A DNA stretch of 64,000 nucleotides from Selaginella moellendorffii (Eukaryota > Plantae > Lycopodiophyta). Positions 11,533 to 61,131 of this stretch are shown here, in pieces. The first letter of the stretch is position 1; every line of letters starts with the position of its first letter. The stretch lies in NCBI RefSeq assembly GCF_000143415.4, contig NW_003314270.1:2535048-2599047 (forward strand). Direction: 5' to 3'. The notes under the pieces were generated by a model. The model ran no database searches. It was not told the DNA's origin and was given only the letters and a program-made list of their open reading frames with translations. The position numbers and the translations under genes are program-made.

Positions 11533-11735
11533 GGGCGCCCTTCTTCTCCTCCACAAGGAACAAAGCATAAAAGCCCTTAAATTCAAAACCCTCGACCGTT
11601 GACCATATCCCATGACAAACCCTAAATTCTAGGACCGTTGACCCTTTGACTATTAAGGATATATAAAATTGACCATGATAAACCCTAAATCTTCTCAAAT
11701 GAGATATAAGGGGATAACGAAGGAAGAAAGAAAAG

Positions 11736-16847: not shown

Positions 16848-18399
16848 TCACAAAATGATAAACCCTAACTATACCCTCTGTCATGTGTTCGAGTCCTTTT
16901 GGAAGACTTTTGTTCAATGTCACTTATTGGTTACAAATTAGGGACTTCGTTTTAAAATTTATAATAGTTGCAGAATGGGGATTATTTTTTTAACCATGTC
17001 TTAGTGAGAAATTGTACTGATATTTGCTCTCAAACAATCGAAGGTGGCAAATTGCATAAGGTGGATAAATGTGTTATACTCATTGGACTCTTATTTTGAC
17101 CACTGCCATATGGCATACTTTTAACTCCACTTTAAGGTTTAGGGATTTATGTCTCACAACTAGAATTTGGGTTTAGATTTAAGCCAAATGCAAAATAAGG
17201 ATAAATACACTTAATAGAGTAAAAAACCAACTCAAAATACAATCTATAATTTATAAGGAAAGGATTAATGCACCTTTTTTTTTTTTTTTAATCAGTTAAA
17301 GATTTAAGGTTAAGCATCCATGGGTTTAAACATAAGATAAACAATAAGGCTAGTGCTTAATATACCCATTATCTCTACTATACTTTATATAATTTTGGTT
17401 ATGCACTTCCCACAGGATCTAGATATTTATAGCTCTCTCTAATACCCATCTCGAAGACTTTTCATTTTGGAGCCTTTAAGTCTACTTTAGTGGGATCCTA
17501 GTGTATACTAATATCCCATCCCCACTTTCCTCTATGCTAGATATAGCAAAGGAGATGTAGAAGCAAATCATGAAAGCCATACTAGAGTTGAGAATCTCAT
17601 AAGACTTCAAATCTAAGAAGGAAATCCCTCACTAGTTTCTTGCCATTTCAAGCTTATTGGTGGAACAATATTATAATTAACACCTCCCTTCTTCTGGAAG
17701 CTGCTCACATTTAGAAAAAAGGGTACCTATCCTATTAGGTCTTTTGTATGAACTTTCATAAAGGTATTTCATGTTTTCTTTTTAGATCATAGTATTTTGA
17801 TTTCAGATTCTTTTTTTTCCAGTTGGCAACCATTTCAATGAGCTCATCTGGTGTTTACTATTATTACAACTTAAATCACTCCTCTCTTTTTTCTCAGTAT
17901 ACTCAAATAAGAGGACTTTTGCCCTTTTCCAATTCCAATCTGGTTTTAGGATTATCTTAATTCATACTTTCTAACAGTGGGTTTAAGAGCAAGGTGGAGA
18001 GCAGACTGAGCAAGAGCATTTGTCCTAAAGAATTCAAAGCATTGCACTGTGGAACTCTTGTTTCAGCTACATAAGGGAAACTTTATTTTAAAGTTAGTTC
18101 ACTTTGCTTCACCCTTCACAGTTGGTAGGTTTCAAAAGGTAAGAGAGGTACTAAAGTATGAATACTGAGGTTTTGAAGGATAACAATGTAGGGTCTAAAA
18201 TAGCACGATCTAGAACACAAAAATGTTGAATTTGGTAATGTGGAGCAAATTGATGCCATCTGGCAGTGCAATACTAACAGTAACCGATGGTTTTTTCACC
18301 CATTGACATGATTTTCAGGCACAGGATCTGGACCTACAGGCACCCAAGGATACCACAACAGAATGGAGTTTCCACTTATGATTTGTCCTTCTGCAATGT

Positions 18400-19845: not shown

Positions 19846-22029
19846 TCATTTGGCCAAGTACTCCTCCGCGAAGCTCTTATCTTTCGGTGACAACTCGCGT
19901 TCTTTGAATCGAAAAGCACTGCGAAGCATGTCTTTAGCTTTCCCATCCGGCCTACACCCAGCCTTGATCATCTCGTCAAACACACCCGAGACCTCGTCCA
20001 GCTTCTCGGCTCGGATCAAAGCCTTCATGAGCGTCGTGTAAGTGATCTTGTCCGCCGTCAATCCAGCCTCCTTGATGTACTCAAACACCGCGAACGCCTC
20101 CTGGCTTCTCCCGGCCATGCTGAAGGCGTTGATGAGCAAGTTGAGCATCGCCAGGTTGATCTCGATGTTCTCTTTCTCCATCGTCTGGAGGACATGAAGC
20201 GTCTGCTCACACATCCCCAGCTGCGCGTAGGCGTTCGCCAGAGCCGAGTAAGCCGTCGGCGATGGCCCCATTCCATCCTCCTTCATCGCCTGGAGACACT
20301 CCACTGCGTCCTGGAAGAGCCGCGCTTGAGCGTAGACGTCCACCAAGGTTGTGTAAGTCACCACGTTTGGAAACATCCCCTTGGAGCGCATCTCCTCCAC
20401 CATCTCGTTCACGTCGTTCCACCGCTTGTGCTCTCCCAGGCCGTGGATCACGATGTTGAAAGTTTGAGCCGTGGGAGCGCAGCCATCGTTCACCATCTTG
20501 TAGTAGAGTTTTCTCGCTTCTAGAGGCTGCCCCGCCTTGCAGCAGGCGTCTATGAGCGAGTTCCAGGACACCACGTCCGGCTCTATGCCACCATCTTGCA
20601 TTTTGAAGAACGCGATGCGGGCTTGCTCCAGCTGCCTGGTCCGGCCGAAGGTGTTGATGATCACATTGTAGACGTGCGCGTCGGGTGTGACTCCTGCTTG
20701 CTGCATCTCTCGCAGGAGCTTCACACCTTTCTGCCACTGCCCTGTGTCCCTGTAGATCGTTATCATCCTCGCGTACATGTAGGTGTTGGGCCGCATATCA
20801 CAGTCCCGCATCTCCTGATAGAGAGCTTCCAGCCGATCCATAAGGCCCGCGCGAGCGTAAGCATCGATGAGCAGGCAGTATGTTATCTTGTTTATCGACA
20901 TCCCTGTGTCTCGGAGTAGCGTCTTGACGGTGTCTATTTGTTGTAGCTGGCCTTTCCTCGAGTAGCCACCGAGAAGCGTGTTGTAAGCCTTGAGGTTCGG
21001 CCTCACGCCATACCACTTCATTTCTTCCAGCAGAGCTTCCGCCTCGGCAGTCCTCCCGTGCTTTCCGAGAGCAAGCATCAGCGATATGTAGCTATCCCTG
21101 TCCGCCACCAGGCCGGAAGCTTGCAACTTCTCCAGGAAAAACATGCCTTCGTTGGGCTTGTGAGCTTGTCCACAGGCAAAGATGAGATCGTTGTAGACTT
21201 TTCCGTCAACCTGGACGCCCTCGGCTTGCATTTCCTGGAAGAGCCTAAACCCCGTGTAGATATCCACAACACCATGCCGGCAAGCTTGAATAACGTGCGT
21301 GTAGCTCACCACGTCCGGAGGAAAGCCGAGAGTCTTCATCTTGCTCAAAGTCTCTAGAGCTTTTCCATAATCCCTGTTCTGTGCGTAAGCTCCGACGAGA
21401 GCATTGTATCCACGTCGCTGAAGATTGGATCCAAGCTTCTCGGCCACCTCTAGAGCTTTGTGTAGTTTCCTCTCCCTTCCATATCCATGGATGACCACCG
21501 AGTCCAAGACGTCGTAAGTCCGGCAGAAGGAATTCTCTCGCAGCCATTCCAAGAGCTCGGAAGCAAAGCTACTGCGTCCACTTACACACAGTTCTTGCAA
21601 GAGCCAGTGCCACGCTCTCTCTGGAACCTTCCTAAACTGTTCTACAGTGTCCTCCCCAAACTTCTCCCCTATAGCGTTCTCCCTTTCCAAGCTGCCGAGC
21701 AATGCCTTCCAAGGCAATCCACCGTTCCAGTGATTCCGGAGCCTCTTCTCAATCTCCTCTAGCGAGATCTCCCGAAGCTTACCTCCATTCCGCGTGAAAA
21801 GCTTCTCATCTACGCCCTCTTGATCCTCCTCCTCCTCCCAAACCCTGAGCTCATCAATCGGGTCTCCATCCTCTTGAGTCCATTGCAGATCATCCGAAAG
21901 AGAGCAAAATCCTACCAATCCTTGCGCCTGCCGTGGCCGCCATGGCGCCATGGCCGCGGAGAGCTTCATCGATGCCATCGCCGTGGAAGAGTGGAAGAAT
22001 GCAGCGGTGTGGAAGCCTGTGGACGCCAT
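19846..22029 (-). CDS. Intronless P-class PPR protein, CRP1-like, probable plastid targeting
   Basis: About 14 tandem 35-aa PPR motifs (YNALVGAY, VVSYTHVI, VVSWNSLIDACCKAG); WLRENSFCRTYDVL resembles the CRP1 pre-PPR segment; transit-peptide-like N-terminus. Confidence 0.88.
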   Translation of the reverse strand: MASTGFHTAAFFHSSTAMASMKLSAAMAPWRPRQAQGLVGFCSLSDDLQWTQEDGDPIDELRVWEEEEDQEGVDEKLFTRNGGKLREISLEEIEKRLRNHWNGGLPWKALLGSLERENAIGEKFGEDTVEQFRKVPERAWHWLLQELCVSGRSSFASELLEWLRENSFCRTYDVLDSVVIHGYGRERKLHKALEVAEKLGSNLQRRGYNALVGAYAQNRDYGKALETLSKMKTLGFPPDVVSYTHVIQACRHGVVDIYTGFRLFQEMQAEGVQVDGKVYNDLIFACGQAHKPNEGMFFLEKLQASGLVADRDSYISLMLALGKHGRTAEAEALLEEMKWYGVRPNLKAYNTLLGGYSRKGQLQQIDTVKTLLRDTGMSINKITYCLLIDAYARAGLMDRLEALYQEMRDCDMRPNTYMYARMITIYRDTGQWQKGVKLLREMQQAGVTPDAHVYNVIINTFGRTRQLEQARIAFFKMQDGGIEPDVVSWNSLIDACCKAGQPLEARKLYYKMVNDGCAPTAQTFNIVIHGLGEHKRWNDVNEMVEEMRSKGMFPNVVTYTTLVDVYAQARLFQDAVECLQAMKEDGMGPSPTAYSALANAYAQLGMCEQTLHVLQTMEKENIEINLAMLNLLINAFSMAGRSQEAFAVFEYIKEAGLTADKITYTTLMKALIRAEKLDEVSGVFDEMIKAGCRPDGKAKDMLRSAFRFKERELSPKDKSFAEEYLAK

Positions 22030-29907: not shown

Positions 29908-32091
29908 ATGACTGAGCTTCGTTTTGTAGCAAGCTGCCTTCCAAAAAGGACGACAAATGCGGCGCCTCTTGACGGAGAAGTTCTTACCAGGTACTCTAAA
30001 TTGCAAGTGGAAGGGGAAAAGCTGGAGGTCACTTTTCTACTCACCGCATTGAAGTCGTGCAGAAAGCTAAAGGATCTTGAGTTCAGCAAAAGGATTCACA
30101 GGGATGCGGTTGCTAGCGGTGACATCTCCAACGTCTTCGTAGCGAACACACTCCTCGACATGTATGTGAAAAGTGGCAGTCTCGATACTGCTCGCAGTCT
30201 TTTCGAAGGCATGAACCAGCGCAGTGCAGTATCCTGGACAGCAATGATAGTGGGATATACTCAGATTGGTCGACCCGAGCTAGCGTTGGAACTATACGAC
30301 CGCATGCAGAACGAAGGCTGTGAACCGGACCGTGTGACACTCTTGGCTGCACTCAAGGCCTGTGCAGCATTTGCAAAGAAAGAAAAGGGACAGCTCCTAG
30401 ATCAGAAAGTGGTGAGGCTCAAGTGCCTGGCAACGGCCAGCCGTCTTTACTCTCAAGCTTGTCAAGGCGGAGATCAGATGGATACTGCTGTAGGGAACAG
30501 TTTGATTGACTTGTTCGCCAAGTGTGGGAGCTTGGAGGACGCTCGCAGGCAGTTCGAGAGCATGCCGAAGCGAAATGTGGTCTCGTGGAACTGCATCATT
30601 CTTGGCTATGCTTTAGGCGGGGAAGGCAGGATAGCGCTGGAGTTCTTCGCACGTATGCAGGAACAGGGGTACCAGCCGAGCGATGTCACATTTCTGGCTG
30701 CTCTCAAGGCTTGTTCTAGCATGGCTGACAAAGAAGAAGGCAAGCTGGTGGAAGGGAAAATCTTGAAGGTGACAAGCTTGGATAGAGGAAGATTGATCCA
30801 CTTTCAGGCACTTCGAAACGTGGGCAGTCTGGGTCTCGCGCTAGGCACAAGTTTCGTTGACGTGTTTGCGAAGTGCGGGAGCATGGTGGAGGCTAGAAAA
30901 ATTTTCGAGGAGCTCCAGACTCGAAGTATGGTTTCTTGGACTGCCATGATGCTGGGATACGTACAAAATGGAGAGCCCGACACGGCTTTGAGGCTATTTG
31001 CCAGGATGTGGGACGAGAGATGCGCTCCCGATGCTCTCGCGTTCGTAGCTGCTCTCAAGGCGTGTGCTAGCTTGGCAGAGACAGAAGAAGCAAAGCTTGT
31101 TGGAGGAAGGCTCGTTAAGTCCGTGGCACTGGAACGGGGAAGGGCCATTCATTCTCAGGCTGCTGGAGCCGGGCTTGTGGATCTCGTGGTGGCGAACACC
31201 CTGATCGACATGTACGCCAAGTGTGGAAGCATCTGGGACGCTCGGCATGTCTTTGAAGCCATGAAGAAGCGCAGCGCAGTGTCCTGGAACTGCATTCTCA
31301 TGGGGTGCGTCCACAATGGCGAGGCCGAGTTAGCTCTCGAGCTCTATCGACGCATGCAGCGGCAGCAAAGCTCGTCATCGTCTCCACCACCAGACGCCGT
31401 AACGTTCGTCGCGGCACTGAAGGCCTGTGCGACGCTGGCAGCTCTGGAAGTCGGGAAACAGATCGAAGCCGAGATTTGCAACGCGGGTTTGGAGTGCGAG
31501 CTGATGGTGGCGAACTCTCTCGTCGATCTCTACGGGAAGAGCGGTGCGATGGGCGAAGCCGAGCGGGTGTTCAGCTCGGTTCCCAGGAAGGATGTGGTGA
31601 CTTGGAGCTGCTTGATCGCGGGATACAGCTCCAGGGGCGACGCGCTGCTCGTGTTTGAGCTGTTCGAGCGTATGCAAGTGGAAGACAAGCTCCAACCCGA
31701 CGGTATCACTTTCCTCTCGCTTCTAACGTCGTGTGCCGCGGCAGGACTCGCTTCCAGAGCCAAGGAGTACTTCGTCTCCATGCAAGCGGTGTATGGCATC
31801 ACTCCCTCGATCGAGCACTACAACTGCGTGGTGGATCTCTTGGGCCGGGTGGGGCAGCTCCAGGACGCAGTGGAAATCGCGAGGAGCATGCCGTATGATC
31901 CAGGTGCTGTGGTCTGGATGGCGCTCCTCGACGCCGCCGAGAAGTGGAGTGATCCGGAAGTGGGAAGAACAGCGTACGAGTTCTTGGTGGAAAGAGGAAG
32001 ATCATCCAAAGCGGCGGGAGCAGCGTCCGCGATAATGGCCAAAATCCAAGCTCACGCCGGGAAGCTTTCAAAAGATTCCTTTTTAAAATAA
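29908..32091 (+). CDS. Intronless PLS-class PPR protein with a degenerate E-like C-terminus and no DYW domain
   Basis: Repeated P-L-S triplets (VSWTAMIVGY / VTFLAALKAC / VANTLIDMYAKCG) and EHYNCVVDLLGRVG..WMALL; no HSE or CxxC deaminase motif. Confidence 0.92.
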   Translation: MTELRFVASCLPKRTTNAAPLDGEVLTRYSKLQVEGEKLEVTFLLTALKSCRKLKDLEFSKRIHRDAVASGDISNVFVANTLLDMYVKSGSLDTARSLFEGMNQRSAVSWTAMIVGYTQIGRPELALELYDRMQNEGCEPDRVTLLAALKACAAFAKKEKGQLLDQKVVRLKCLATASRLYSQACQGGDQMDTAVGNSLIDLFAKCGSLEDARRQFESMPKRNVVSWNCIILGYALGGEGRIALEFFARMQEQGYQPSDVTFLAALKACSSMADKEEGKLVEGKILKVTSLDRGRLIHFQALRNVGSLGLALGTSFVDVFAKCGSMVEARKIFEELQTRSMVSWTAMMLGYVQNGEPDTALRLFARMWDERCAPDALAFVAALKACASLAETEEAKLVGGRLVKSVALERGRAIHSQAAGAGLVDLVVANTLIDMYAKCGSIWDARHVFEAMKKRSAVSWNCILMGCVHNGEAELALELYRRMQRQQSSSSSPPPDAVTFVAALKACATLAALEVGKQIEAEICNAGLECELMVANSLVDLYGKSGAMGEAERVFSSVPRKDVVTWSCLIAGYSSRGDALLVFELFERMQVEDKLQPDGITFLSLLTSCAAAGLASRAKEYFVSMQAVYGITPSIEHYNCVVDLLGRVGQLQDAVEIARSMPYDPGAVVWMALLDAAEKWSDPEVGRTAYEFLVERGRSSKAAGAASAIMAKIQAHAGKLSKDSFLK

Positions 32092-40320: not shown

Positions 40321-41166
40321 ACTCCTTTGAGTGCCACAAAAACATCATGAGAGGCTGGGCAATCGTGCTGTTGTAAAGGGCCTCCTTCATAACACCTCTT
40401 TTGTATTGGGTCATTTGTAGTTGTCTAAGTGTAATTAGCAAGCTTATCTATGGGTCTTATCTATGGGTCATCTTATTAGCAGCAGGATCACCCAGCCCTT
40501 AGCCCCAATAGTCAGAATCTAAAAGGTTTCTATTATCATACAAGAAAATAAAAAGGAATTACTTTTTATATTTTTACATTTTATTTTACAGTGGTTCAGT
40601 TTTGGTTTTATAAATTTTTTCAAGGAAACAAAAGATCTCAATAATAACATATATAAGAGAAAATGTTATCTAAATATCATTTATTATTTCTTACAGGTTG
40701 ATTCTATAAAAAAATTTCATATTGAGTAGATTCCCTTTACATTTTTTCTATTTAAAATATTACTCCCATATTATTTATTTATTAGTTTCTTATTGTTAAA
40801 CAGGGTTTGGTGTAAACAGGATTTATATCAGTTTTAAGCACTACTGTACACTAACACTAACCTTAAACACTAATTTTAGATAAATATAAGCTAAGATAAG
40901 TATAAGATTATTATGGTTATTATAATTTATTTGTAATCCACGATATTAATTTAGTCAGGCCAAACTCCTTGTACTCCACAAAGACAAAGGAAGAGTAGAG
41001 CTATTCTTCGAAATGAGTGTACTTTCGAAACATGCTGTTCTGGGTATCGAAATAAAAGAAAAAGAAAATTACCTCCACGAGAAATTTTGTGTCTCACATG
41101 GTCAGTTAGGATCAAACAATCACTTGATCTGATTTCTTATAAGAACAAGGGTATTGATAGTATTTC

Positions 41167-43590
41167 CTAGCGATTAAGGAGTGCTTTCTTGGTGGTGGGC
41201 GTGACAAACCTGAGCAGATCACTAGAACTTAAAAGCTTGCTCATGTGCTCCCTACGCATTTGCACGTAAATCTCCCGGTTCTTGCCGCCCAGCACAGAGG
41301 GGAGAATAAACACCAGATCTCCAAACATGGCATTGATGCAAAACGAGAAGTAGGCTGGCCTCCCCCACCCAAAGTCAATGTCGTACACCGGGAAGATGTG
41401 AAGGCTGGTGCAATTCACGTCCTTCCCACCATACGTGTCGAGGTTATATGTCACACCCATCCCCTTGCGCTGCTCAATCTCCATCCAGTCAACGCACGAC
41501 TTCACCGTCTCTGTTGACATGCCCAGTATATCCTGTGGATAAGCCGTGCTGCGTATGACATGTGCCTGGCTCGAATGTGGCCTGCATTGGCCGGCAGTGA
41601 CGGTGCGTGTACAGCGTTGCCAAAGAAGCCCATCGGGAGGGTTGGCTGCCACCTTTTGCCCCCGCGCAGTGACATGGTGTAAGCGAATTTGGTGGTGTCG
41701 ACATCAATAAGCTCTCGAGCCTCGGTCATGGACTTCCAGAAGAGGGCCGCCACGGCCTCAAATGACGTGGCAGTGCCGTAGCCGTCGGGGCCACTCTCGA
41801 TCTCACGGGCCAGCTCCTCAGCCTTGTCGGACGTCAGGATGAGCACCTGTTGACAGTATGAGGTGGGTGCTGCCATTGATGTATCAGCCATGTAGCTCTC
41901 CACGGCCTCTGGTGGCACTGCCACGTAGTCCCTGACCGGCACGTTGACCACTGGCGGCTCCCGCGGCATGAGGAGCTCGGGCTTGAAGACGGGCACCGTT
42001 GACATTGGCAGCCCACGGTTGACCTCGGCCCACGACTTTTGAAAGAAAAGGCCTGAATATCCGTCCAGGACAAGCTCCGTACAGGTTTGACCCACGGCGA
42101 TGCCACCGCAAGCAAACCGTGTCACCTGAGAGAAGAAAAAAAAATACAAAGGGCTTCAGATTTGAGAAGAATTCTCAACTTGCCTGCATATGGAAGAATG
42201 GCGCCTCTGGAATATTTTCAATCAGCCACTCAGGCGCATTCAGCTCCTCCTCGATGGAGTCCTCCCACTCGTCCAGCCTCGCTAGAGTGTGCGCAACTCT
42301 CAGCGTGATCCCGGCATCATTACAATTCACTGCCTTCTCCCCGCACTCGTTCTCCTGGAGTCTCCCGGCAAACACGTAGTGATCCACCAGAACCTTGGAC
42401 AGGGAATCCTTGATCTTGGAGACCATATGATTGAAGCTGTCAATACTGGAACTGGTTTTGTAGAAGTGCACAGACTTCAGGTACGAGTTCTTGAAGAGCA
42501 TCTTGTCCAAGTTAGTGAGGGATACCCAGCATGGCTGCTTTGTGGGGATTGCAGGGACGATGGTATCAATGGAATCCAAAATAACAACTTTGCCGCCTTT
42601 CTTTCTTGTGCTACTAGTCGCAAATAAAGTCGCATTCTTGAGCAGCCTTTCCATTTGCTCCTGGGACATTTGCACCTCCATAGCCGTTCCCTCTTCTTCT
42701 TCCCTGGGAAGAATGAATACCATTCCATCTCCAATCCACGGAGAATAGTGAACCGGCTTTCCCCACCCGAAATCAGTCTCATAGGCAGGAATGCTGACAC
42801 AAGTAACATCTTTTCCACAGTGCTTGACCTCGCTGACATGCTTGTTGGTGGCATCCTTGTTGGTCATGCACTGTAAAATCAATGCCGATGTGGCCTCGAG
42901 AGGCGTACCACCAATCTCACGGACCAGGTCGTCCACTTTGCAAGGATTGATCACCAAAACCTCTCGCTTGACAGGATTGCCAATGGTTGCACTGGCCGCT
43001 TTGGCCAACTTCACTAAACCACTCGACGTCGCCTCTAAATCACCACCACTCTCCGGCGTTGACATGGTCGTACCACGATTGACTTCGGCCCACCACTTTG
43101 GAAACTGGAGTGCTGAGGATGCCAACCCATCCAAGACGGCAAATCCAATTGCAATTCCACCACAGCTAAATCGTGTCACCTACAAATGTAACTCCAATCA
43201 AATCGATGTGGTATAATTGTAAGATCTATTTACCTGGATCCGGCACACTGGTGATCCGTCAGAGCACTCATCAATCTTGCAAAGCTCGTCTCGGATGGAG
43301 CAGCGATCCATGCTCTCCCAATCGTCAAACCTTGCAATGGCGTGAGCGATGGTCAACACCACCTGTGCTTTTGCCAGGAAAGAGTACTCTTCTACACTTA
43401 GAGCGCTCGCAAGGGACTGCTTGAGCTCTTCCACGACGAGAGCAAAGGGACTCTTACAGCTGGGTTTAAAGTAGTAGACATCCTTGACATAGAAGAAGCT
43501 CTTGTGATTGGAAAGAGCTGCCCAAGATTGTTGCCTCCCTGCTGTTGCTGGAGAAACAGTTGAAACAGAAGTTAGAGTTACAGCAGCCAT
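41167..43590 (-). CDS. BAHD acyltransferase-like double-module gene (shortened module fused in frame to a near-complete module); 1-bp frameshift near 41535, so possibly a pseudogene
   Basis: Exons 43590-43234, 43179-42184 and 42125-41167; two DFGWG motifs, AGRL, CNDAG and two conserved Q-position introns; HXXXD absent (FAVLDG and ELVLDG). Confidence 0.75.
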
Positions 43591-44065
43591 ACTTCACGAG
43601 CTGAATTGGCCAGGATAGCTTTGTGCAATATATTGGCCTCCCATGAGGAGCATCAACGTTGTGCGTGTGTCTCGTGGGGATGGCAGTGTCTCGCGGGCGT
43701 GTGTCTTGTGGGGTTTAGAAAAGTTTATGATTGTTAAAGTCAATGCATACTTGTTCATCCTTATAAAACGCACACCAGGACACTAGTGTGATGTTGCAAT
43801 TTCATTCATTCATTCATTCCTTATTTACAGGGTCTTGTGGTGCCCACCAAAAAGCATGAGACTGATGGATTATAATAAGCAGTTTGCGCTTGTGCTCGCT
43901 CACCAGTTAGAGATCCATGGCATTGATTCAGGGTGGCGCTGGTGCTGGTGCCGTGAGAGGTGAAGAAATGCCAGCATCTCTTGCTTAGATCTGCAAATCT
44001 ATTGTACAGACAAGCTGTAAGTTAAGAAAAAGTATAAGGAAATCTACTATATCGGCACAAGTGGA

Positions 44066-44165
44066 NNNNNNNNNNNNNNNNNNNNNNNNNNNNNNNNNNN
44101 NNNNNNNNNNNNNNNNNNNNNNNNNNNNNNNNNNNNNNNNNNNNNNNNNNNNNNNNNNNNNNNNN
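44066..44165. other. Assembly gap (100 N)
   Basis: Run of n characters. Confidence 1.
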
Positions 44166-44311
44166 ACAAATTTTAAATTAAGAAAAAGGAGGACTCCATC
44201 TTTTTGATTGGCTCTAGGGGTCTGTATATTTATGATAATATCTTGATTTATGGATACCCACGAAGAATTACACACACTCAGGTACCCACATACAATGACA
44301 CGTAGACATAT

Positions 44312-44313
<2 letters not shown>

Positions 44314-44377
<64 letters not shown>
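44314..44377. repeat. (AT)n microsatellite, about 32 units
   Basis: Perfect dinucleotide run. Confidence 0.95.
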
Positions 44378-44379
<2 letters not shown>

Positions 44380-44818
44380 TGAAATGAAAGTCATATCAAT
44401 GTCAAATACCATTATTGTATATTGTCATTCTTGCTTCCCTATCTCTATCTTTCAACATATTGTAAATAATTGTATGATAGGTCATTAGGTGCTTAATTCA
44501 AGGCATTAAAGTCTTCTCTTGAGCTCATGCATACCATCTTTATTATCTCCAAATCCATCAAAACAATCTTTATTGTCTAATCTAGAGACAATATCATCTA
44601 TATGGTGTATGTACCAATACCAGAAACAACTTATTGTTCACAACTTTGAGTTCAAGAGGGTATAAATCAGCACCACACTGTCGATCAATTCATTAGTGCT
44701 GAATTCATCCAGTCCTTCTTCGCTTGCATGTGAGTCTTGGGTGGAAGCTTCAACCTGGATCAAATTACTGAGCAAAGCACAATTGTTTCACGGACATAGT
44801 TAATGACAAACCAAACAA

Positions 44819-46252
44819 TCAAAAGAATGCTCCAAACCTCTGGCCTGGGCTTGCACCAGTGCTGCTTCTGTTGCTACCGCAACTGGTAAATTTTGTCACC
44901 AGCATGTTGCCCAAGAACCTCTCCATCACACCGCTGGGCATGCAGAGCGCCACCTTTCGCTCGCGCCCTCCTTTAGCAGTGGGCAGGACGAAAGCAGTGC
45001 CGTCTCCAAACCATACCTCGGGGACAAGCGTGTAGTGAACCTGTTGCCCCCAACCAAAATCGGTCTTGAAGATGGGAAACGTGTGCATGGTGGTGCAGTT
45101 CACATCTCTGCCGGCATAGTAGTCCACGTTAAACGCAAACTCAAGGCCTTTCCGGCGCTGGATTTCCATCCAGTCGACAGCTGATTGGATGTATTCGCCA
45201 CTGATCTTGGCAATGTCGTTGTGGATGAGCTTTGCGGCGAACGAGATGTGGTGGGACTTGATATCGCCGGCCCTGGCCGGGAGGGTCGCCAAGTGGATGG
45301 CATTTCCAAAGTAGCTCATCGGGACCGGAGGGTCCTTAAATCGCTTGTTGCCCCTGCAAGACACCGGGTACATGTACCGCGTGGTGGCATCGTTGGGCAG
45401 CTCGCGAGCCTCGGTGATGGACTTCCAGATGAGAGCCGAGAGAGCCACGAAGCTGCTGGCCCGGCCGAAGCCAAACGGGCCAGCCTCGACCTCGTGGACG
45501 AGCGCGTCCATGCCCGATGAGCTGACGGTGATGATCTTCTTGCGATAAGTGGAAGCCGCGTCGACGATCTGGTAGCCGAGCTTCTCGGCGGCGACATAGT
45601 CCCGCATTGGAACGGTCACCCTTGGTGGGTTGCGGGCTTGGAACAGCTCGGCATGGAACAGCGGTGGGGTGATTGGCAATCCCCGGTGTATCCGCGACCA
45701 GGCATGGAAGAATTCGGACACGGAGTAGCCGTCTGCTACAGTCTCACACAACGCACCGCCTAGAGCAATGCCACCACAGCCAAAACGTGTAATCTACATA
45801 TAAACATCGATCAGAGTAGTTCTTCCTATACTTCACACCTGGATTTGCAGCGTGGGCGAGTTGGCGCAAAACCTGTCCTGGGTGTTGAGTTGCTGCTCGA
45901 TGGAGCAATCGTCCAAGCTCTGCCAGTCATCAAACCTGGCATCGGTGGAGGCCACCCGGAGCGGAATGCCCGCGTCGTTGCAGTTGACTTTGGGGGAGCC
46001 ATCGGTACCAGCTTGAACTCTCCCTGCAAACACAAAGTAGTGAGTGAGGGTGAGCGCTAGGGAGCGCTTGAGCTTGGCAACGGTGGCTTCAAATGGTTGT
46101 GGAGCTTGTGGTGGCATGTAGTAGTGCACGAAACTGGAATAGAACGAGGAGCTTGCTAGGAGATCGACGTTCGAAAGGGATTTCCAGCAGGGCTGTGGAG
46201 TTGGAGTTGCGGGTGTGACATTGTGAATGCGGATTAGGGAAACGGAGGCCAT
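44819..46252 (-). CDS. Intact BAHD acyltransferase-like protein with EXXXD in place of HXXXD (2 exons)
   Basis: LKRSLALTL..FAGRV..CNDAG, Q-intron, ITRFGCGGIALGGALCETVADG, YFGNAI and TDFGWG. Confidence 0.88.
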
Positions 46253-46499
46253 TGCAGCTCATGGGAAAAACTTGGTCTCGCTTGGAGATTAATAGCATTG
46301 AACTTCCCACGAGATGCATGCCGCCGTTGGTTACTGTAGTGCATTCACGTAATTCAGGTTTTTAGACTCGCTCAATTTCACATTGCCAACGTTACTGGTT
46401 TGTAATCCAGGTTGGAGAGTCAATCTGTGAATGGAAGCAAGGATCAGAAGGTGAATTGAAGCAACAAGTTGACTGGTCAATTTAACTGTTAAGGATACC

Positions 46500-46794
46500 G
46501 AGGAGATCCTCGCGCCATCGCCGGATCACACGAGTTCTAGCAGCAGTACTAGCACTTCCATGGCGGAATCTTCTTCGTGTAGCACAAGCACCACCGCGGC
46601 CAATTCTTCTTCTTCCTTGGAAGAGGAGCATCGCGTCTAACGAGATCATTCCACAAAATTTTAAAGAGAAATATTCTTGTTTGGAATTCGTTTCCCGAAA
46701 AAAAAAGTGGCCTTTTTTTTAATAGCTTTGATGTTTTAGTGCTGTGAGCCAAAGAATCTTGTTAGAGTCAATCGCAAAATCAAATCGCCCATCC
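46500..46794 (+). repeat. Duplicated 3' coding end and 3' flank of the C2-domain gene (copy of 48201-48522)
   Basis: Near-identical from gaggagatcctcgcgccatcgccggatcacacgag to aaatcgcccatcc with small indels. Confidence 0.93.
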
Positions 46795-47206: not shown

Positions 47207-47552
47207 GATACTGGAGACAATTTTATTCCCGCCGCTAGATTATAGACTATCCAATGGCTACAGATACTCTTTAAAAGCATCGCACATATTTGTGACTGAT
47301 CCAGTCCAGATCCTTTTCTCTTTTTTCTCTCGTTGCTTTTGCCTTTGGATGAATCGGTCGATGATCAATTCCGCTGCGATGGTTGTTGCGAGTGTCTGAT
47401 CGCCGCCTGCAGAAGCTCTGATCTCGCAGTACCAAATTCGCTCCGGAGTCGTCGTTTCCTTTCCTCGTAGCATTCATTCTCCAACGTCCCAAAAAGGCGG
47501 CATTCCCTTGGACGTTTTGCAAGGGCTCTCTCTCTTTTCCACTCCGATCATC

Positions 47553-48341
47553 ATGAAGCTCATCGCAAAGAGCTCGTCGAGTCTCTCCATCTCCAGCTCC
47601 AAGGATCGGGTCTCCCCAGGCAAGGAAAAGCAGCAGAAGAGCAACAACAGGAAATCCAAGCAGCCCAGGACGAGGGCGATCGAGTTCTGCATCATCTCCG
47701 CGCAGGATCTCAAGAGCGCCACGAAATTCGGCCGGATGCGCAGCTACGCGGTGGCGTCCATCTATCCCGATCGCAAGGTGAGCACCCGGATCGACTGCGA
47801 GGGCGGCACCAATCCCACCTGGGACGCCAAGCTCGTGCTCGAGGTGGACGAGCGCGTGTTGGTGGGCGACGAGGACGACACCCACACGCAGCTCACCATC
47901 GACATTTTCAGCCGTGGATCCCTCCGCGACAAGCTGGTGGGGACGGTCAGGATCCTGGTGTGCGACGCCGTGAGGGGGGAGAGGAATATGCGCAGCATCG
48001 TGAATAGATTCCCGGTGGCCTCCTATCTCGTCTTCCGGCCCGGGGGGTGCCCGCAGGGGATTCTCAACGTGTGCATCCCCCCCGGCGGGAGATTCCCGGA
48101 GAGATTCGACTCCATATCCTTCAAGCGCGGCGAAGATCTTCGCGTCATGGCTTCTTCGCTCAAGCCGGAGGAGATCCTCTCGCCACCGCCGGATCACACG
48201 GAGGAGATCCTCGCGCCATCGCCGGATCACACGAGTTCTAGCAGCAGTACTAGCACTTCCATGGCGGAATCTTCTTCGTGTAGCACGAGCACCACCGCGG
48301 GCAGTTCTTCTTCTTCCTTGGGAGAGGAGCATCACGTCTAA
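47553..48341 (+). CDS. Intronless C2-domain protein (SRC2/BAP-like)
   Basis: IEFCIISAQDLK..YAVASI..TRIDCEGGTNPTW..DKLVGTVRI..SYLV..GILNV; Ser-rich tail with a 33-bp tandem duplication (EEILSPPPDHT / EEILAPSPDHT). Confidence 0.85.
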   Translation: MKLIAKSSSSLSISSSKDRVSPGKEKQQKSNNRKSKQPRTRAIEFCIISAQDLKSATKFGRMRSYAVASIYPDRKVSTRIDCEGGTNPTWDAKLVLEVDERVLVGDEDDTHTQLTIDIFSRGSLRDKLVGTVRILVCDAVRGERNMRSIVNRFPVASYLVFRPGGCPQGILNVCIPPGGRFPERFDSISFKRGEDLRVMASSLKPEEILSPPPDHTEEILAPSPDHTSSSSSTSTSMAESSSCSTSTTAGSSSSSLGEEHHV

Positions 48342-48559
48342 CGAGATCACTCCAGGGAGAAAAAAACAAAATTTATAGAGAAATATTCTTGTTTGGAATG
48401 TTCCAATTCGTTTCCCGAAAAAAAAATGGCCATTTTTTTTTATAGCTTTGCATTAACGATGTTTTATTGCTGTGCGCCAAAGAATCTTGTTAGAGTCAAT
48501 CGCAAAATGAAATCGCCCATCCACCCAGCCGCCACAAAGAATTTATTACTGATTGACCA

Positions 48560-58354: not shown

Positions 58355-61131
58355 ATGGTAAGGTGCTGTTTAGTGCTAATGCTCGTCTTGTGGATTTGCT
58401 CAATGGGAAACAGCCAAGAAGAGCGCTATAAATCGAGCTACGATGAAGCCCAAATGAGGTGCCCATTCTCCTCGTCATTCTCCGGAGATGAAGATGGATC
58501 AGATCTGAAGAAGGACGAGCTCAGCGTCCAAATGGGCGACTGGTTCCAGGAGCCCAATGCGAAATCCTTGCTGCTTCCTGGTTTGACTGCGAATACAACT
58601 CGCCCCGTGCAGCTCGCCTCCTTCTGGATCACGCACGTCAGTCTCCGGAGCAAGACAGACATTGTCAAGATCAGCGCGGTTTTGCAGCTCGCGATCTCTG
58701 TCGAAAGGATCATCGGCTACTTCACGAGTGCATCCGAGAGCTTCGAATCGTCCCCGGATTTCTCATCACTGATGGTGCTCCTGGAAGGGATCTACTTTGA
58801 GACACAGCAGAACGACCGCGGTGTTTGCATGGTCGGATGTACGGTTCTCATCAACGGGGCAAGGATCTGCGATCTCTACCTGGAGCTCCATTTCCCTCGG
58901 AGGTTTTCGCTCAAATCTAGGGAAGTCAACGGCTTTCTGACCAGCAAATCTGGGGCGTTTGACACTGTAGTGCTTGCGCTTCAGCTCGGAGGGGACACCA
59001 AGTACGAGTTTGACAATGGAAATCTCGTCAAGCCGGCATGCGATGCATCCATGGCCATGCAGCAGATGCCCCCACAGGGCATCCGGGTTTACAGAAAATC
59101 AGGTTGCGTGGAACTGGTGGGCATCTTCCAATATGAGTGGAGCCAGCTCTCAAGCTCAGGGCCGTTTTCCCTCGATGCCACTGCCATGCAAATCATGGAC
59201 ATGCGCTGCATAGACACCCCGTCGGGAGCAAATGTGAGCGCCACCTTTCGAGCAGTTTCAGTGAGACTTGACAACCCCGATCTCTCCCGAGCTCGGACGG
59301 GACTGAGGAATGCATTCGTCTTTGTTGCTGAAGGAGTGTACAAATCTTCTACTGGCGAGATTTGCATGCTTGGCTGCCGGAACAGAGAACCTAGCTCTCC
59401 ATCACTCAGCTGCGATGTCCGAGTGTCGATTTTCGTGGCACTCTCTCTCCATCAGCCAGAGATACATCTTCTTTGGAAAACTGACGAGCTTTGGTGGGGG
59501 TAATTTGTTTCGCCCCACAAAGTTTGTTCGCGTCGCACAGTTGGGCAGGCTGCCATCAGAGATTCCCAAGTTGATGAGCTATACGTATTCGAGAGCTCGA
59601 GAAGGAGAGGAGATGGCGAGATTGGAGATAAGTCTGTTGGATCAGGTGAAGCAGTCGATGCTCAAGTTCCTAAAGCCGAGCAAAACGTACTCAATCCAAC
59701 AGCTGGGACAGGACTTGTCCTTCTCTTCACTGATCATCCAGAAGAACAGCAGCAGAAGCAGTATCCAAGCTTCTCCAAAGTTTTTGGACATCCAGGTTCT
59801 TGCCATTGAAGACGATCTCATCTATTATTCTGGCGAAGTCTCCAGCAAAGAGTTTGATCTTCGAGACGCAAGAACTCTGCGAGTTGCTGTGGAGCTCACA
59901 CTGACCAATGTTGCTCAGGCATCAGCCGAAGGAGTTTACGTTCCTGGCACGGGACGAATCTATCTCGTTGGCTGCCTCAAGAGAAAAACTCTCGCAAACT
60001 GTGTGATCGATATCGATTCCCAGCCTGACTGTAGCGTGAGCGTCGTGATCCAGTACCCTCCTTACAACACGCAGTGGCTCGTCAGTCCGACTGTCCGCGC
60101 CAAGATCACCAGCACTCGCCCGAGTTCCGACCCGAGCTTCTTTACTCCAATCCATGCTGAGACGTTTCCAATGCCCTACATATACCAATACCGGCAACTG
60201 AAGCTCCCATCGGTTCTGTCCAAGAAGACGCTTGAAGCCGTCTTGAGCGCCATTACCCTCAGCCTGATGCTGCTTTGCATCATCTTGCAGCTGATCCACG
60301 TCAGGAAATCTGGATCCGCCGGGGCCGTGCCTTTCATCTCGCTGGTGATGCTCGGCGTCCAGGCGTTTGGATACTCGATCCCGCTCATCACCGAGAGGTG
60401 AGGCCTTGTTTGTAAGACACACTAGCCGTAAACCGCGATTCTCGACGATCAACGAGCAAGCCACGGAGGTTACCCAGAAGGTACTCTACCTCGTCAAGTT
60501 CCTCTCGCTCGCGGCGTTCCTTCTCGTGCTCTGGCTGTTCTTCAAGGTGGTGCGCTACCGCACCCGACTCGCCAAGTTCCCACGCGATCGCAATCGACGC
60601 CGCGTTCCCAGCGACGTGAGAACCGCCAAGATCTTTGTGCTCGTCCATTCTCCCGGCCTTCTCACGGTCCTCGCCTTCCAGAGCTTGTCCAGTGAGATGC
60701 TGGTGGCATTGGACGGGACACTCTACAAACCCAAGATGAAGTGGATCCGGGAGCTCAAAGAGTATGCCGGGTTCGTGGGGGATTTGTTCCTGCTGCCACA
60801 AGTGATCGAAGTTTCCGGGTGGGATCAGATCAAGGGGAACCCACTGGCACGAGCTTACTACATGGGAATGACGGCGTTGCGCTTGCTTCCTCACGTCTAC
60901 AACGCGATCACTATTCCACTGCCCGATGCATATGAGTTTCTGGTGTTTACAAAGCCGAGGACTGGGGACTGGCTAATTTCTGCGATGGCTTTGCTCCTGG
61001 CGGCGACGGTCTATGCACAGCAGCAGTGGTCGGGGAATGGATCTTACGAGACGCTGCTATCGACAGAGAAATTTGAGGCTGAGCATTGCTCTAGAAGATG
61101 GAAGATCGAGTCAACAGTAACCAAATTTTAA
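58355..61131 (+). pseudogene. Tandem DUF2921-like paralogue with two frameshifts
   Basis: Colinear with 55201-58254; 2-bp loss in a (CT)n run near 59441-59450 and 1-bp gain near 60393-60398. Confidence 0.8.

What the first reader, a model, noticed from the sequence alone, without database searches (positions are those of the whole stretch)
42060..45745. BAHD paralogues share a His-to-Glu swap of the catalytic HXXXD motif (EXXXDG)
Seen: two diverged BAHD copies read Q|VTRFACGGIAVGQTCT-ELVLDG (42060-42077) and Q|ITRFGCGGIALGGALC-ETVADG (45728-45745). In both, Glu sits 17 residues after the conserved Q-intron, and DFGWG and GNA are retained. The 44819-46252 copy is fully intact. Established: His at this position is the general base of BAHD acyl-CoA transferases, and CER2-like BAHDs are a precedent for function without needing it. 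CAY to GAG needs two substitutions and cannot arise by C-to-U editing. Inference: a conserved non-canonical BAHD subfamily with altered chemistry or a non-catalytic or scaffold role.
Basis: partly seen in the sequence, partly recalled or inferred. Interest (0 to 1): 0.75.

Follow-up and report, generated by a model that had tools for sequence, protein, structure and literature searches.

The report
BAHD enzymes with Glu replacing His
This stretch of the Selaginella moellendorffii genome carries members of an undescribed lycophyte and fern branch of the BAHD plant acyltransferases in which the normally essential catalytic histidine is always a glutamate, which suggests altered enzyme chemistry that nobody has yet tested.

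Summary
ELVLDG (42060-42077) and ETVADG (45728-45745) lie on the minus strand, with Glu exactly where BAHD enzymes have the catalytic His (AtHCT His153).

The window is Selaginella moellendorffii and holds three tandem BAHD units:
- **Copy C** is intact on this haplotype, transcribed and spliced. A second 70-nt intron removes the old stop at 44819. The true product is 499 aa (RefSeq XP_002968004.2) and ends in -SKL, a peroxisome signal. The other haplotype carries a +1 frameshift.
- **Copy A** has no start codon of its own and a real 1-nt frameshift. It is transcribed fused in frame to unit B, a decayed BAHD relic.

Glu is not a local accident. About 8-10 S. moellendorffii genes in four diverged lineages, plus one Adiantum gene, form a well supported clade that carries it. 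The sister clade is Lycopodiaceae BAHDs with His, including the proven acetyltransferase PtACT-1. All other conserved scaffold residues are kept, and dN/dS is about 0.2.

My preferred reading (about 45%) is active enzymes that use the Glu as base or as anchor for the substrate. No paper found describes this clade. The assembly gap is intergenic and touches neither gene.

The parts
45839..46252 (-). Copy C exon 1 (Met1 to Gln138)
   Evidence: The ORF and the Pfam Transferase match come. The exon end is fixed by RNA contig joints.
45794..45838 (-). Copy C intron 1, the conserved BAHD 'Q-intron' (45 nt, GT..AG)
   Evidence: It is skipped in contigs of runs X1 and X8.
44838..45793 (-). Copy C exon 2 (residues 139-456 plus two bases), holding ETVADG and DFGWG
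   Evidence: Pfam Transferase E=1.3e-34. 100% identical to EFJ31351.1 / XP_002968004.2.
45743..45745 (-). GAG codon of Glu155, at the place of the catalytic His
   Evidence: Unchanged in RNA contigs.
45047..45061 (-). DFGWG motif of copy C
   Evidence: Read from the sequence. Alignment.
45992..45996 (-). Run of five C on the coding strand; the other haplotype and RNA contigs X2 and X8 carry one extra base here (a frameshift allele)
   Evidence: table 4. The alternative-haplotype RefSeq model P0176 starts MAPPKVNC at this point.
44768..44837 (-). Copy C intron 2 (70 nt, GT..AG); it contains the stop codon of the old gene model (44819-44821)
   Evidence: It is skipped in contigs of X1, X2 and X8, which come from three studies.
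44638..44767 (-). Copy C exon 3: a 43-residue tail ending Ser-Lys-Leu-stop (SKL at 44641-44649)
   Evidence: Translation. The same tail is in RefSeq XP_002968004.2 and in the allele P0176. The tail is predicted disordered, with pLDDT below 50.
44066..44165 (.). Assembly gap, intergenic between copy C and unit B, next to an (AT)n run at 44303-44378
   Evidence: The transcripts end at about 44524 and about 43661, and no contig bridges the gap.
43234..43590 (-). Unit B exon 1 (ATG at 43590), a decayed BAHD N-terminal part
   Evidence: ORF. tblastn to P0001 gives 29% identity. No Pfam hit on its own.
43180..43233 (-). Unit B Q-intron (54 nt)
   Evidence: It is skipped in contigs of X1 and X2.
42184..43179 (-). 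One open frame holding unit B exon 2 and, from about 42594, copy A exon 1 with neither a stop nor an ATG between them. B exon 2 reads FAVLDG, has an internal deletion of about 80 residues, and keeps DFGWG.
   Evidence: RefSeq model P0020 and JGI model P0170.
42126..42183 (-). Copy A Q-intron (58 nt, GC..AG)
   Evidence: It is skipped in contigs of X1 and X8. The boundary was read.
41502..42125 (-). Copy A exon 2 up to the premature stop; ELVLDG lies at 42060-42077
   Evidence: ORF. Pfam E=4.7e-29. Codons.
41167..41538 (-). Rest of copy A after a 1-nt frameshift near 41536. It is still open in the shifted frame, with DFGWG at 41362-41376.
   Evidence: RNA contigs of X1, X2 and X8 match the genome here with no gaps, so the frameshift is real.

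Best explanation
The window carries three tandem members of an uncharacterised lycophyte/fern subclade of BAHD (PF02458) proteins. In this subclade the catalytic His of HXXXD was replaced once by Glu, which was then kept.

Shown:
- The clade exists.
- Its intact members are under purifying selection.
- The window genes are transcribed and spliced.
- Copy C makes a 499-aa protein with a disordered tail ending -SKL.
- Copies B and A form one fused, frameshifted transcript and are relics.

Inferred:
- The intact Glu-type proteins are still enzymes.
- The acyl-CoA-binding two-domain scaffold is unchanged.
- The Glu155 carboxylate takes over the job of the imidazole. It would act either as general base for the acceptor's hydroxyl or amine, or as an anchor for a positively charged (amine or alkaloid-like) acceptor.
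- They would therefore catalyse acyl transfer, or a closely related CoA-thioester reaction, with a changed acceptor or pH profile.
- Copy C would work inside peroxisomes, where acyl-CoAs are made.
For: - **Position:** Glu aligns exactly to the catalytic His.
- **Clade:** it comprises window C, window A, the P0002 group, the P0171 group and Adiantum KAI5074138, with support 97/98. It is sister to the Lycopodiaceae His clade that includes PtACT-1, a proven O-acetyltransferase.
- **Invariance:** all 12 members of the P0002 cluster and the members of the P0171 cluster in which the motif could be read carry Glu.
- **Specific change:** of about 100 positions conserved across BAHDs, residue 155 is the only one where the Glu clade differs from both its His sisters and the outgroups. 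Asp159, Gly/Ala160, YFGN, Arg285, Trp261 and DFGWG are kept. That pattern fits a maintained active site, not a decaying one.
- **Oxyanion Trp:** it is already Phe/Leu in the active sister PtACT-1, so its absence is not a sign of lost acyl transfer.
- **Selection:** P0002 tandem copies show 17 synonymous against 12 non-synonymous changes, dN/dS about 0.2, binomial p = 4e-5. Copy C against the X9 allele shows 7 synonymous against 5 non-synonymous changes, p = 0.009.
- **Expression:** contigs from three studies cover C and B-A with all introns removed.
- **Fold:** AlphaFold model with pLDDT 87 and pTM 0.86; best structural match AtHCT with TM 0.88.
- **Precedent for Glu as base:** Lewendon et al. 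1994 on chloramphenicol acetyltransferase His195. Only the title was seen, as cited in PMC5986005.
- **Precedent for a peroxisomal clade-V BAHD with PTS1:** BEBT/HSR201 (PMC12408371).
Against: - No activity, substrate or localisation was tested.
- In canonical BAHDs, mutation of this His abolishes activity (reviewed in PMC5489795).
- In CAT, replacing His195 with Ala costs about 10^5-10^6-fold in kcat, so a plain swap to Glu would also be expected to cost much activity.
- The two best known BAHDs without this His are not acyltransferases: EPS1 is a lyase and the CER2-LIKEs are elongase cofactors.
- Copy C has a frameshifted allele on the other haplotype, and copy A is broken, so the window copies may be dispensable.
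- The clade was found in only one Selaginella species and one fern in the databases searched.
- A His-bearing pair (P0012/P0019) nests inside the clade, which complicates the 'one change, then fixed' story. Both of these are broken genes.
Confidence: 0.45

Rival explanations
1. The Glu-type proteins are neofunctionalised enzymes that no longer transfer acyl groups. They would use the BAHD pocket for another reaction, such as a lyase, isomerase/lactonase, or acyl-CoA thioesterase. This would resemble EPS1 (His to Ser, isochorismoyl-glutamate lyase) or COSY.
For: EPS1 shows that loss of the catalytic His, together with loss of the oxyanion Trp, can mark a new chemistry inside this fold. Here both positions are non-canonical: Glu155 and Met/Leu374. 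Glu is strictly conserved, which fits a chemical role. Yeast Atf1 keeps thioesterase activity without the His (PMC5489795).
Against: Unlike EPS1, the change is confined to one residue. No bulky substitutions specific to the Glu clade were found at conserved positions, and the Trp replacement is shared with the active acetyltransferase PtACT-1. The CoA-side motifs are retained.
Confidence: 0.25
2. The Glu-type proteins are non-catalytic. They would act as binding partners or scaffolds of another enzyme, as CER2-LIKE proteins do for KCS condensing enzymes.
For: CER2-LIKE1 and CER2-LIKE4 lack the His, and CER2 works without it (PMC5489795). That review also notes a large Selaginella-only clade next to the CER2-LIKEs whose function is unknown.
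Against: - The window proteins match HCT-type chains far better than CER2 chains: E=1.8e-51 against 3e-13.
- They keep DFGWG, which the Arabidopsis CER2-LIKEs lack.
- They sit next to a working acetyltransferase in the tree.
- A site that no longer does chemistry would be expected to vary, yet Glu is invariant across lineages that are only 35-47% identical.
Confidence: 0.12
3. The family is decaying. On this reading the Glu is a tolerated inactivating change, and the genes are on their way to becoming pseudogenes. The window copies are already partly there.
For: Copy A is frameshifted and has no start. Unit B is heavily deleted. Copy C has a +1 frameshift allele that is the form seen in two of three RNA data sets. 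The relatives P0012/P0019 are also broken.
Against: - dN/dS is about 0.2 in two independent comparisons.
- Open frames have been maintained over divergence to 35-47% identity, and the clade includes a fern member.
- The other conserved residues are intact.
- Birth and death of copies is normal in specialised-metabolism families and does not show that the whole clade is dead.
Confidence: 0.1

Closest known systems
PtACT-1 (Phlegmariurus tetrastichus acetyltransferase 1, WOJ51791.1), O-acetyltransferase of Lycopodium alkaloid biosynthesis (PMC10700139)
   Same: - It is the nearest characterised relative: 497 bits to the clade profile and about 44% identity.
- It belongs to the same lycophyte clade.
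- It has the same non-Trp residue at the oxyanion position.
- It has the same His at the YFGNAxH position.
- It keeps DFGWG.
   Different: PtACT-1 keeps the canonical His (AHAIADG) and has a proven acetyl-CoA-dependent activity. The window proteins have Glu and no known activity.
Hydroxycinnamoyl-CoA:shikimate hydroxycinnamoyltransferase (AtHCT 5KJT, SmHCT 6DD2)
   Same: It is the best solved-structure match by sequence (E=1.8e-51) and by fold (TM 0.88). RefSeq names the Glu-type genes after it.
   Different: Catalytic His153 corresponds to Glu155. Oxyanion Trp371 corresponds to Met374. The shikimate-binding Arg356 corresponds to Phe359. The window proteins are not in the HCT clade of the tree. 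The RefSeq names 'shikimate O-hydroxycinnamoyltransferase' and 'rosmarinate synthase' are not supported.
EPS1 (Arabidopsis isochorismoyl-glutamate pyruvoyl-glutamate lyase, 6WAO)
   Same: It is a lineage-restricted BAHD clade defined by strict replacement of the HXXXD His, and it arose by tandem duplication. The oxyanion Trp is also replaced.
   Different: EPS1 has Ser, not Glu. Its acyl-donor tunnel is filled by bulky residues, it belongs to clade Ib, and it is confined to Brassicaceae. It is a distant relative (E=2e-11).
CER2-LIKE proteins (cofactors of very-long-chain fatty acid elongation)
   Same: They are BAHD-fold proteins that work without the catalytic His.
   Different: CER2-LIKEs lack DFGWG, sit at the ER with KCS enzymes, and show varied residues at the His position. 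The window proteins keep DFGWG, have an invariant Glu, and match CER2 chains only weakly.
BEBT / HSR201 (peroxisomal clade-V BAHD benzoyltransferases of salicylic acid biosynthesis)
   Same: They are clade-V BAHDs with a C-terminal PTS1 that takes them to peroxisomes. Copy C ends in the canonical PTS1 tripeptide SKL.
   Different: BEBTs have a normal HXXXD. Copy C's signal sits on a separate spliced-on exon after a disordered linker of about 50 residues. Orthology is not indicated: the BEBT-like chain 9UOD scores E=4e-29, weaker than the HCT chains.
Chloramphenicol acetyltransferase His195Glu variant (Lewendon et al. 1994, cited in PMC5986005)
   Same: It belongs to the same HXXXD acyltransferase superfamily, and the paper's title reports evidence for a general-base role of a Glu placed at the His position.
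   Different: It is an engineered bacterial enzyme. Only the citation and the His195Ala figures were seen here, not the data for the Glu variant.

Membership tests
BAHD acyltransferase superfamily (Pfam PF02458, Transferase) | Significant match to the Transferase family profile over both halves of the protein | tested here: met
   Copy C exon 1 scores E=1.9e-19 and exon 2 scores E=1.3e-34. The pieces of copy A score E=4.7e-29 and 1e-11.
BAHD acyltransferase superfamily (Pfam PF02458, Transferase) | Two-domain BAHD fold | tested here: met
   Model pLDDT 87.3 and pTM 0.86. The top 50 PDB matches listed are all BAHD-fold chains, with TM up to 0.90.
BAHD acyltransferase superfamily (Pfam PF02458, Transferase) | Catalytic His of the HXXXD motif | tested here: not met
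   Glu in copies C and A, and Phe after a 4-residue deletion in unit B. The Asp and the Gly of the motif are kept.
BAHD acyltransferase superfamily (Pfam PF02458, Transferase) | DFGWG motif near the C-terminus | tested here: met
   45047-45061 in C. 41362-41376 in A, where it is out of frame. Also present in B.
BAHD acyltransferase superfamily (Pfam PF02458, Transferase) | Conserved intron directly after the Gln that precedes the HXXXD region | tested here: met
   Introns of 45, 58 and 54 nt are removed at that place in C, A and B.
BAHD acyltransferase superfamily (Pfam PF02458, Transferase) | Acyl-CoA-dependent acyl transfer activity | not testable with these tools
   This needs recombinant protein assays.
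HCT (shikimate O-hydroxycinnamoyltransferase), the name RefSeq gives the paralogues | Substrate-contact residues of solved HCTs: catalytic His, oxyanion Trp, and the Arg that binds the shikimate carboxylate | tested here: not met
   The alignment to AtHCT shows His153 as Glu, Trp371 as Met, and Arg356 as Phe. The roles of these residues come from PMC4790474 and PMC11605079.
HCT (shikimate O-hydroxycinnamoyltransferase), the name RefSeq gives the paralogues | Placement inside the HCT clade | tested here: not met
   The proteins fall in a separate lycophyte/fern clade with 100/100 support, apart from the HCT-like outgroups.
CER2-LIKE clade | Close sequence kinship to CER2 proteins, and absence of DFGWG as in the Arabidopsis members | tested here: not met
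   CsCER2 chains score E=3e-13 against 1.8e-51 for HCT. DFGWG is present. The feature list comes from PMC5489795.
CER2-LIKE clade | Physical and functional partnership with a KCS condensing enzyme | not testable with these tools
   This needs co-expression or interaction assays.
Peroxisomal PTS1 proteins | C-terminal tripeptide of the PTS1 class on the mature mRNA's product | tested here: met
   Exon 3 ends in SKL-stop. It is joined to exon 2 in RNA contigs of three studies. The same end is in XP_002968004.2 and in the allele P0176.
Peroxisomal PTS1 proteins | Import into peroxisomes | not testable with these tools
   This needs localisation of a tagged protein with a free C-terminus.

The most novel reading that the evidence does not exclude
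The Glu-type BAHDs are an old clade, shared by lycophytes and a fern, of enzymes with a catalytic mechanism not yet described for this fold. The carboxylate at the His position would drive a reaction other than classical acyl transfer. Alternatively it would drive acyl transfer through a different proton relay, possibly tuned to cationic amine substrates. One member (copy C) would be recruited to peroxisomes by gaining a spliced-on SKL exon.
Probability: 0.25. Interest if true: 0.75.

Novelty: new variant of a known kind. Interest (0 to 1): 0.55.

Why it matters
BAHD enzymes build much of plant specialised chemistry. Family surveys usually define members by HXXXD and discard sequences without it, as the 218-species survey states. 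A conserved, selected, expressed Glu-type clade would therefore have been filtered out of the maps of this family.

The two earlier cases of BAHDs lacking the His (EPS1 and CER2-LIKE) each turned out to have an unexpected function. A third, independent case with an invariant Glu gives a direct, cheap test of whether a carboxylate can run this active site. The test is wild type against Glu-to-His and Glu-to-Ala variants. It may also point to unknown lycophyte metabolism, possibly peroxisomal.

The work also corrects gene models and names in the reference annotation. This includes the 462-aa model, the forced 697-aa fusion model, and the 'HCT' and 'rosmarinate synthase' labels.

Tried and rejected
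- **C-to-U or other RNA editing restoring His:** rejected. RNA contigs match the genome at both Glu codons.
- **Misalignment or chance:** rejected. The alignments are gap-free, and the column holds His in 129 of 136 relatives.
- **Assembly gap disrupting a gene:** rejected. The gap is intergenic. No contig bridged it, so its true length stays unknown.
- **Sequencing error as the cause of copy A's frameshift:** rejected. Three RNA data sets agree with the genome.
- **A compensating His specific to the Glu clade:** none was found by sequence. His305, His174 and His320 are shared with the His-bearing sisters.
- **Exclusive monophyly of the Glu sequences:** rejected by an AU test (p = 0.0005, group named after seeing the tree). 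The broken His-bearing pair P0012/P0019 nests inside the clade.
- **Search for more members in other lycophytes and ferns:** the word-index searches and the exhaustive profile search gave only S. moellendorffii and one Adiantum protein. They also gave one unrelated HCT-like transcript with Glu (P0027).
- **Technical failures:** a first motif regex missed most copies, and a first MAFFT run timed out. Both were redone.
- **Joined models:** Exons were used by reference, and whole proteins only as database ids (P0001, P0178, P0020, P0170). The length of the B-A fused frame (658 aa) is arithmetic on coordinates.

Full report
**What is in the sequence.** The window is nuclear DNA of Selaginella moellendorffii. 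The product of 44819-46252 is 100% identical to EFJ31351.1, 'BAHD family acyltransferase'.

On the minus strand there are three tandem units of the BAHD family (Pfam PF02458). I call them C (46252 to 44638), B (43590 to about 42600) and A (about 42594 to 41167).

- 45728-45745 reads ETVADG.
- 42060-42077 reads ELVLDG.

In both, Glu is the 17th residue after the Gln that ends exon 1. It aligns without gaps to the His of HXXXD in ordinary BAHDs and to His153 of Arabidopsis HCT. DFGWG and FGNA are present in both copies.

**The assembly gap.** The gap at 44066-44165 lies between the two transcription units. RNA-derived contigs put the 3' end of C at about 44524 and the 5' end of the B-A transcript at about 43661. 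No reading frame crosses the gap. None of the four runs laid on the region bridges it, so its length is unverified, but it does not bear on the finding.

**Gene models from RNA.** Contigs from three independent studies (X1, X2, X8) behave as transcript assemblies. They are small assemblies in which every intron is removed.

- *Copy C.* Its transcript has two introns. One is the conserved 45-nt 'Q-intron' (45794-45838). The other is a 70-nt intron (44768-44837) that removes the stop codon of the old 462-aa model. The third exon (44767-44638) adds 43 residues and ends Ser-Lys-Leu-stop. This equals RefSeq XP_002968004.2, which is 499 aa. SKL is the canonical peroxisomal targeting signal. The tail is predicted to be disordered (residues 446-499, pLDDT below 50), as expected for an exposed signal. 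Peroxisomal clade-V BAHDs with a PTS1 are known: BEBT and HSR201 (PMC12408371).
- *Units B and A.* A single 2414-nt contig runs from 43661 to 41136 with both Q-introns removed, one of 54 nt and one of 58 nt (the latter GC..AG). Unit B's second exon runs in frame, with no stop and no ATG, into A's first exon.
- *Unit B.* It is a relic: 29% identity to C, a 4-residue deletion at the motif (FAVLDG), and about 80 residues missing.
- *Copy A.* It has a 1-nt frameshift near 41536. The fused frame of 658 codons stops at 41502, and A's DFGWG is out of frame. Three RNA sets match the genome there without gaps, so the frameshift is real. The shifted frame is still open for about 110 codons, so it is probably recent.
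- *Existing models.* The JGI model of 697 aa (P0170) jumps over these defects. RefSeq's 453-aa model (P0020) reads into A's intron.

**Copy C has a broken allele.** RNA contigs of X2 and X8 carry one extra base in the five-C run at 45992-45996. The RefSeq model from the other haplotype scaffold (P0176, 416 aa) begins MAPPKVNC exactly there. One haplotype of the sequenced plant therefore has a +1 frameshift at about codon 86. X2 also lacks two bases at 45784-45785, which I cannot explain.

Against a more divergent allele seen in a DNA run (X9), copy C shows 7 synonymous and 5 non-synonymous differences, including 3 synonymous and none non-synonymous in the SKL exon. This is fewer non-synonymous changes than neutrality predicts (p = 0.009).

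**The Glu is a clade character.** A profile search of 1.84 billion representative proteins gave 4934 BAHDs. There is a clear score gap after 13 representatives. In 136 full-length top hits the catalytic column holds His 129 times, Glu 5 times and Arg once.

The Glu proteins are:
- window C and window A;
- the P0002 group on scaffold GL377603.1, with tandem copies on both haplotypes and AEV[VI]LDG or AELVLDG in all 12 cluster members;
- the P0171/P0014 group on GL377569.1, with ENILDA;
- Adiantum capillus-veneris KAI5074138.1, with SEMVVDA;
- an unrelated HCT-like transcript from run SRR25391575, with NEILADG.

In a careful maximum-likelihood tree the Selaginella and Adiantum Glu proteins form one clade (97/98). 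They sit beside Lycopodiaceae proteins that keep His. Among those His proteins is PtACT-1, the O-acetyltransferase of Lycopodium alkaloid biosynthesis (PMC10700139).

One His-bearing pair (P0012/P0019) nests inside the clade next to P0171. An AU test rejects moving it out (p = 0.0005, with the caveat that the group was chosen after seeing the tree). Their locus is broken, with an internal deletion, a frame change, and DFGWG lost. The fewest changes on the tree are one His-to-Glu at the base of the clade, one return to His (CAC against GAG/GAA) in that dead lineage, and one independent gain in P0027.

My results agree.

**Constraint.** Two tandem P0002 copies differ by 17 synonymous and 12 non-synonymous changes, giving dN/dS of about 0.18-0.23 (p = 4e-5 against neutrality).

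I examined about 100 positions that are at least 60% conserved in 112 outgroup BAHDs. Residue 155 is the only one where the Glu clade differs from both the His sisters and the outgroups. The following are all kept:
- Asp159 and Gly/Ala160;
- the CGG turn;
- Trp170 and Trp261;
- Arg285;
- YFGN;
- DFGWG.

The Trp that forms the oxyanion hole in HCT (Trp371; PMC11605079) is Met or Leu here. It is already Phe or Leu in the His sisters, including the active PtACT-1, so this does not argue for loss of acyl transfer.

No His is specific to the Glu clade. His305 in YFGNAxH is invariant in the clade but is shared with PtACT-1.

The structure model is confident and most like HCT.

**What it most likely does.** An invariant Glu in an otherwise untouched catalytic scaffold, under purifying selection, next to a working acetyltransferase, fits a protein that still does chemistry at this site. 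I therefore prefer (about 45%) the reading that Glu155 acts as general base or as a charged anchor for the acceptor in an acyl-CoA-dependent reaction.

A Glu at this position has been reported to act as general base in chloramphenicol acetyltransferase, which belongs to the same superfamily. This rests on Lewendon et al. 1994, whose title I saw only as a citation in PMC5986005.

The rivals are:
- a new non-transfer chemistry, as in EPS1 (about 25%);
- a non-catalytic partner role, as in the CER2-LIKEs (about 12%);
- family decay (about 10%).

None could be tested here. For copy C, peroxisomal location is a sequence-based inference only.

**Comparison with known families.**
- The proteins belong to the BAHD fold family but fail its catalytic-His criterion.
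- They are not HCTs despite their RefSeq names. The His, the Trp and the shikimate-binding Arg are all replaced, and the tree placement differs.
- They are not CER2-LIKEs. DFGWG is kept, and sequence kinship to CER2 chains is weak.
- They resemble EPS1 only in evolutionary pattern.

**Novelty.** Full-text searches for BAHD with EXXXD, and for Selaginella with HXXXD or catalytic histidine, found no description of this clade. One large survey states that it removed sequences lacking HXXXD. The only 'EXXXD' mention is an uncharacterised yeast Atf-like protein. I rate it a new variant of a known kind.

**Limits.**
- The RNA status of the runs is inferred from intron removal and assembly size, not from their records.
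- Contigs cannot give expression levels.
- Sampling of other lycophytes and ferns depends on what the databases hold.

Noticed in passing
window 46497-46653 and 48198-48354: A 157-nt direct repeat at 96% identity. The first copy duplicates the 3' end (Ser-rich C-terminus and stop) of the C2-domain gene at 47508-48341 (+). It sits about 250 nt upstream of BAHD copy C's start codon.
   Followed up: partly
window 45784-45785: The RNA contig of run X2 lacks two bases in the A-run at the start of copy C's exon 2, in addition to the +1 base at 45992-45996. Together these still leave the frame broken. It is unclear whether this is an allele or an assembly artefact.
   Followed up: no
L004 (GL377569.1) 10001-11421: P0012/P0019 are relatives that nest inside the Glu clade yet carry His (codon CAC). 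The locus has an internal deletion, a frame change and a lost DFGWG. It is either a two-step return to His in a dead gene or a small gene conversion.
   Followed up: partly
L002 (Logan SRR25391575 contig) 294-1655: P0027 is an HCT-like transcript of an unidentified plant that reads NEILADG. It lies in the tree far from the Selaginella clade, so it represents an independent His-to-Glu change in a BAHD.
   Followed up: partly
L001 (GL377603.1) 10001-11417, 15773-17188, 21206-21417: Three near-identical tandem Glu-type BAHD genes lie within 12 kb, with a Peptidase_C26/GATase gene between them. The amino-acid differences between the two full copies in exon 2 cluster mostly around the EXXXD motif.
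   Followed up: partly
window 19846-22029 (-), 29908-32091 (+), 49623-51836 (-): Three long intron-less pentatricopeptide-repeat ORFs. The window also holds a SET-domain ORF (9556-11613), an EF-Tu-like GTPase ORF (15380-16444) and two DUF2921 ORFs (55183-59503). No other specialised-metabolism genes lie next to the BAHDs among the large ORFs scanned.
   Followed up: no
window 44303-44378: An (AT)n microsatellite of about 75 nt sits directly beside the assembly gap. It probably caused the gap. Reads appear cut there in the laid runs.
   Followed up: no
window 41100-43000: The divergent DNA run X9 gives no contig at 95% likeness or better over most of the B-A unit, although it covers copy C. The B-A fusion may be absent or much more diverged in that plant.
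   Followed up: no
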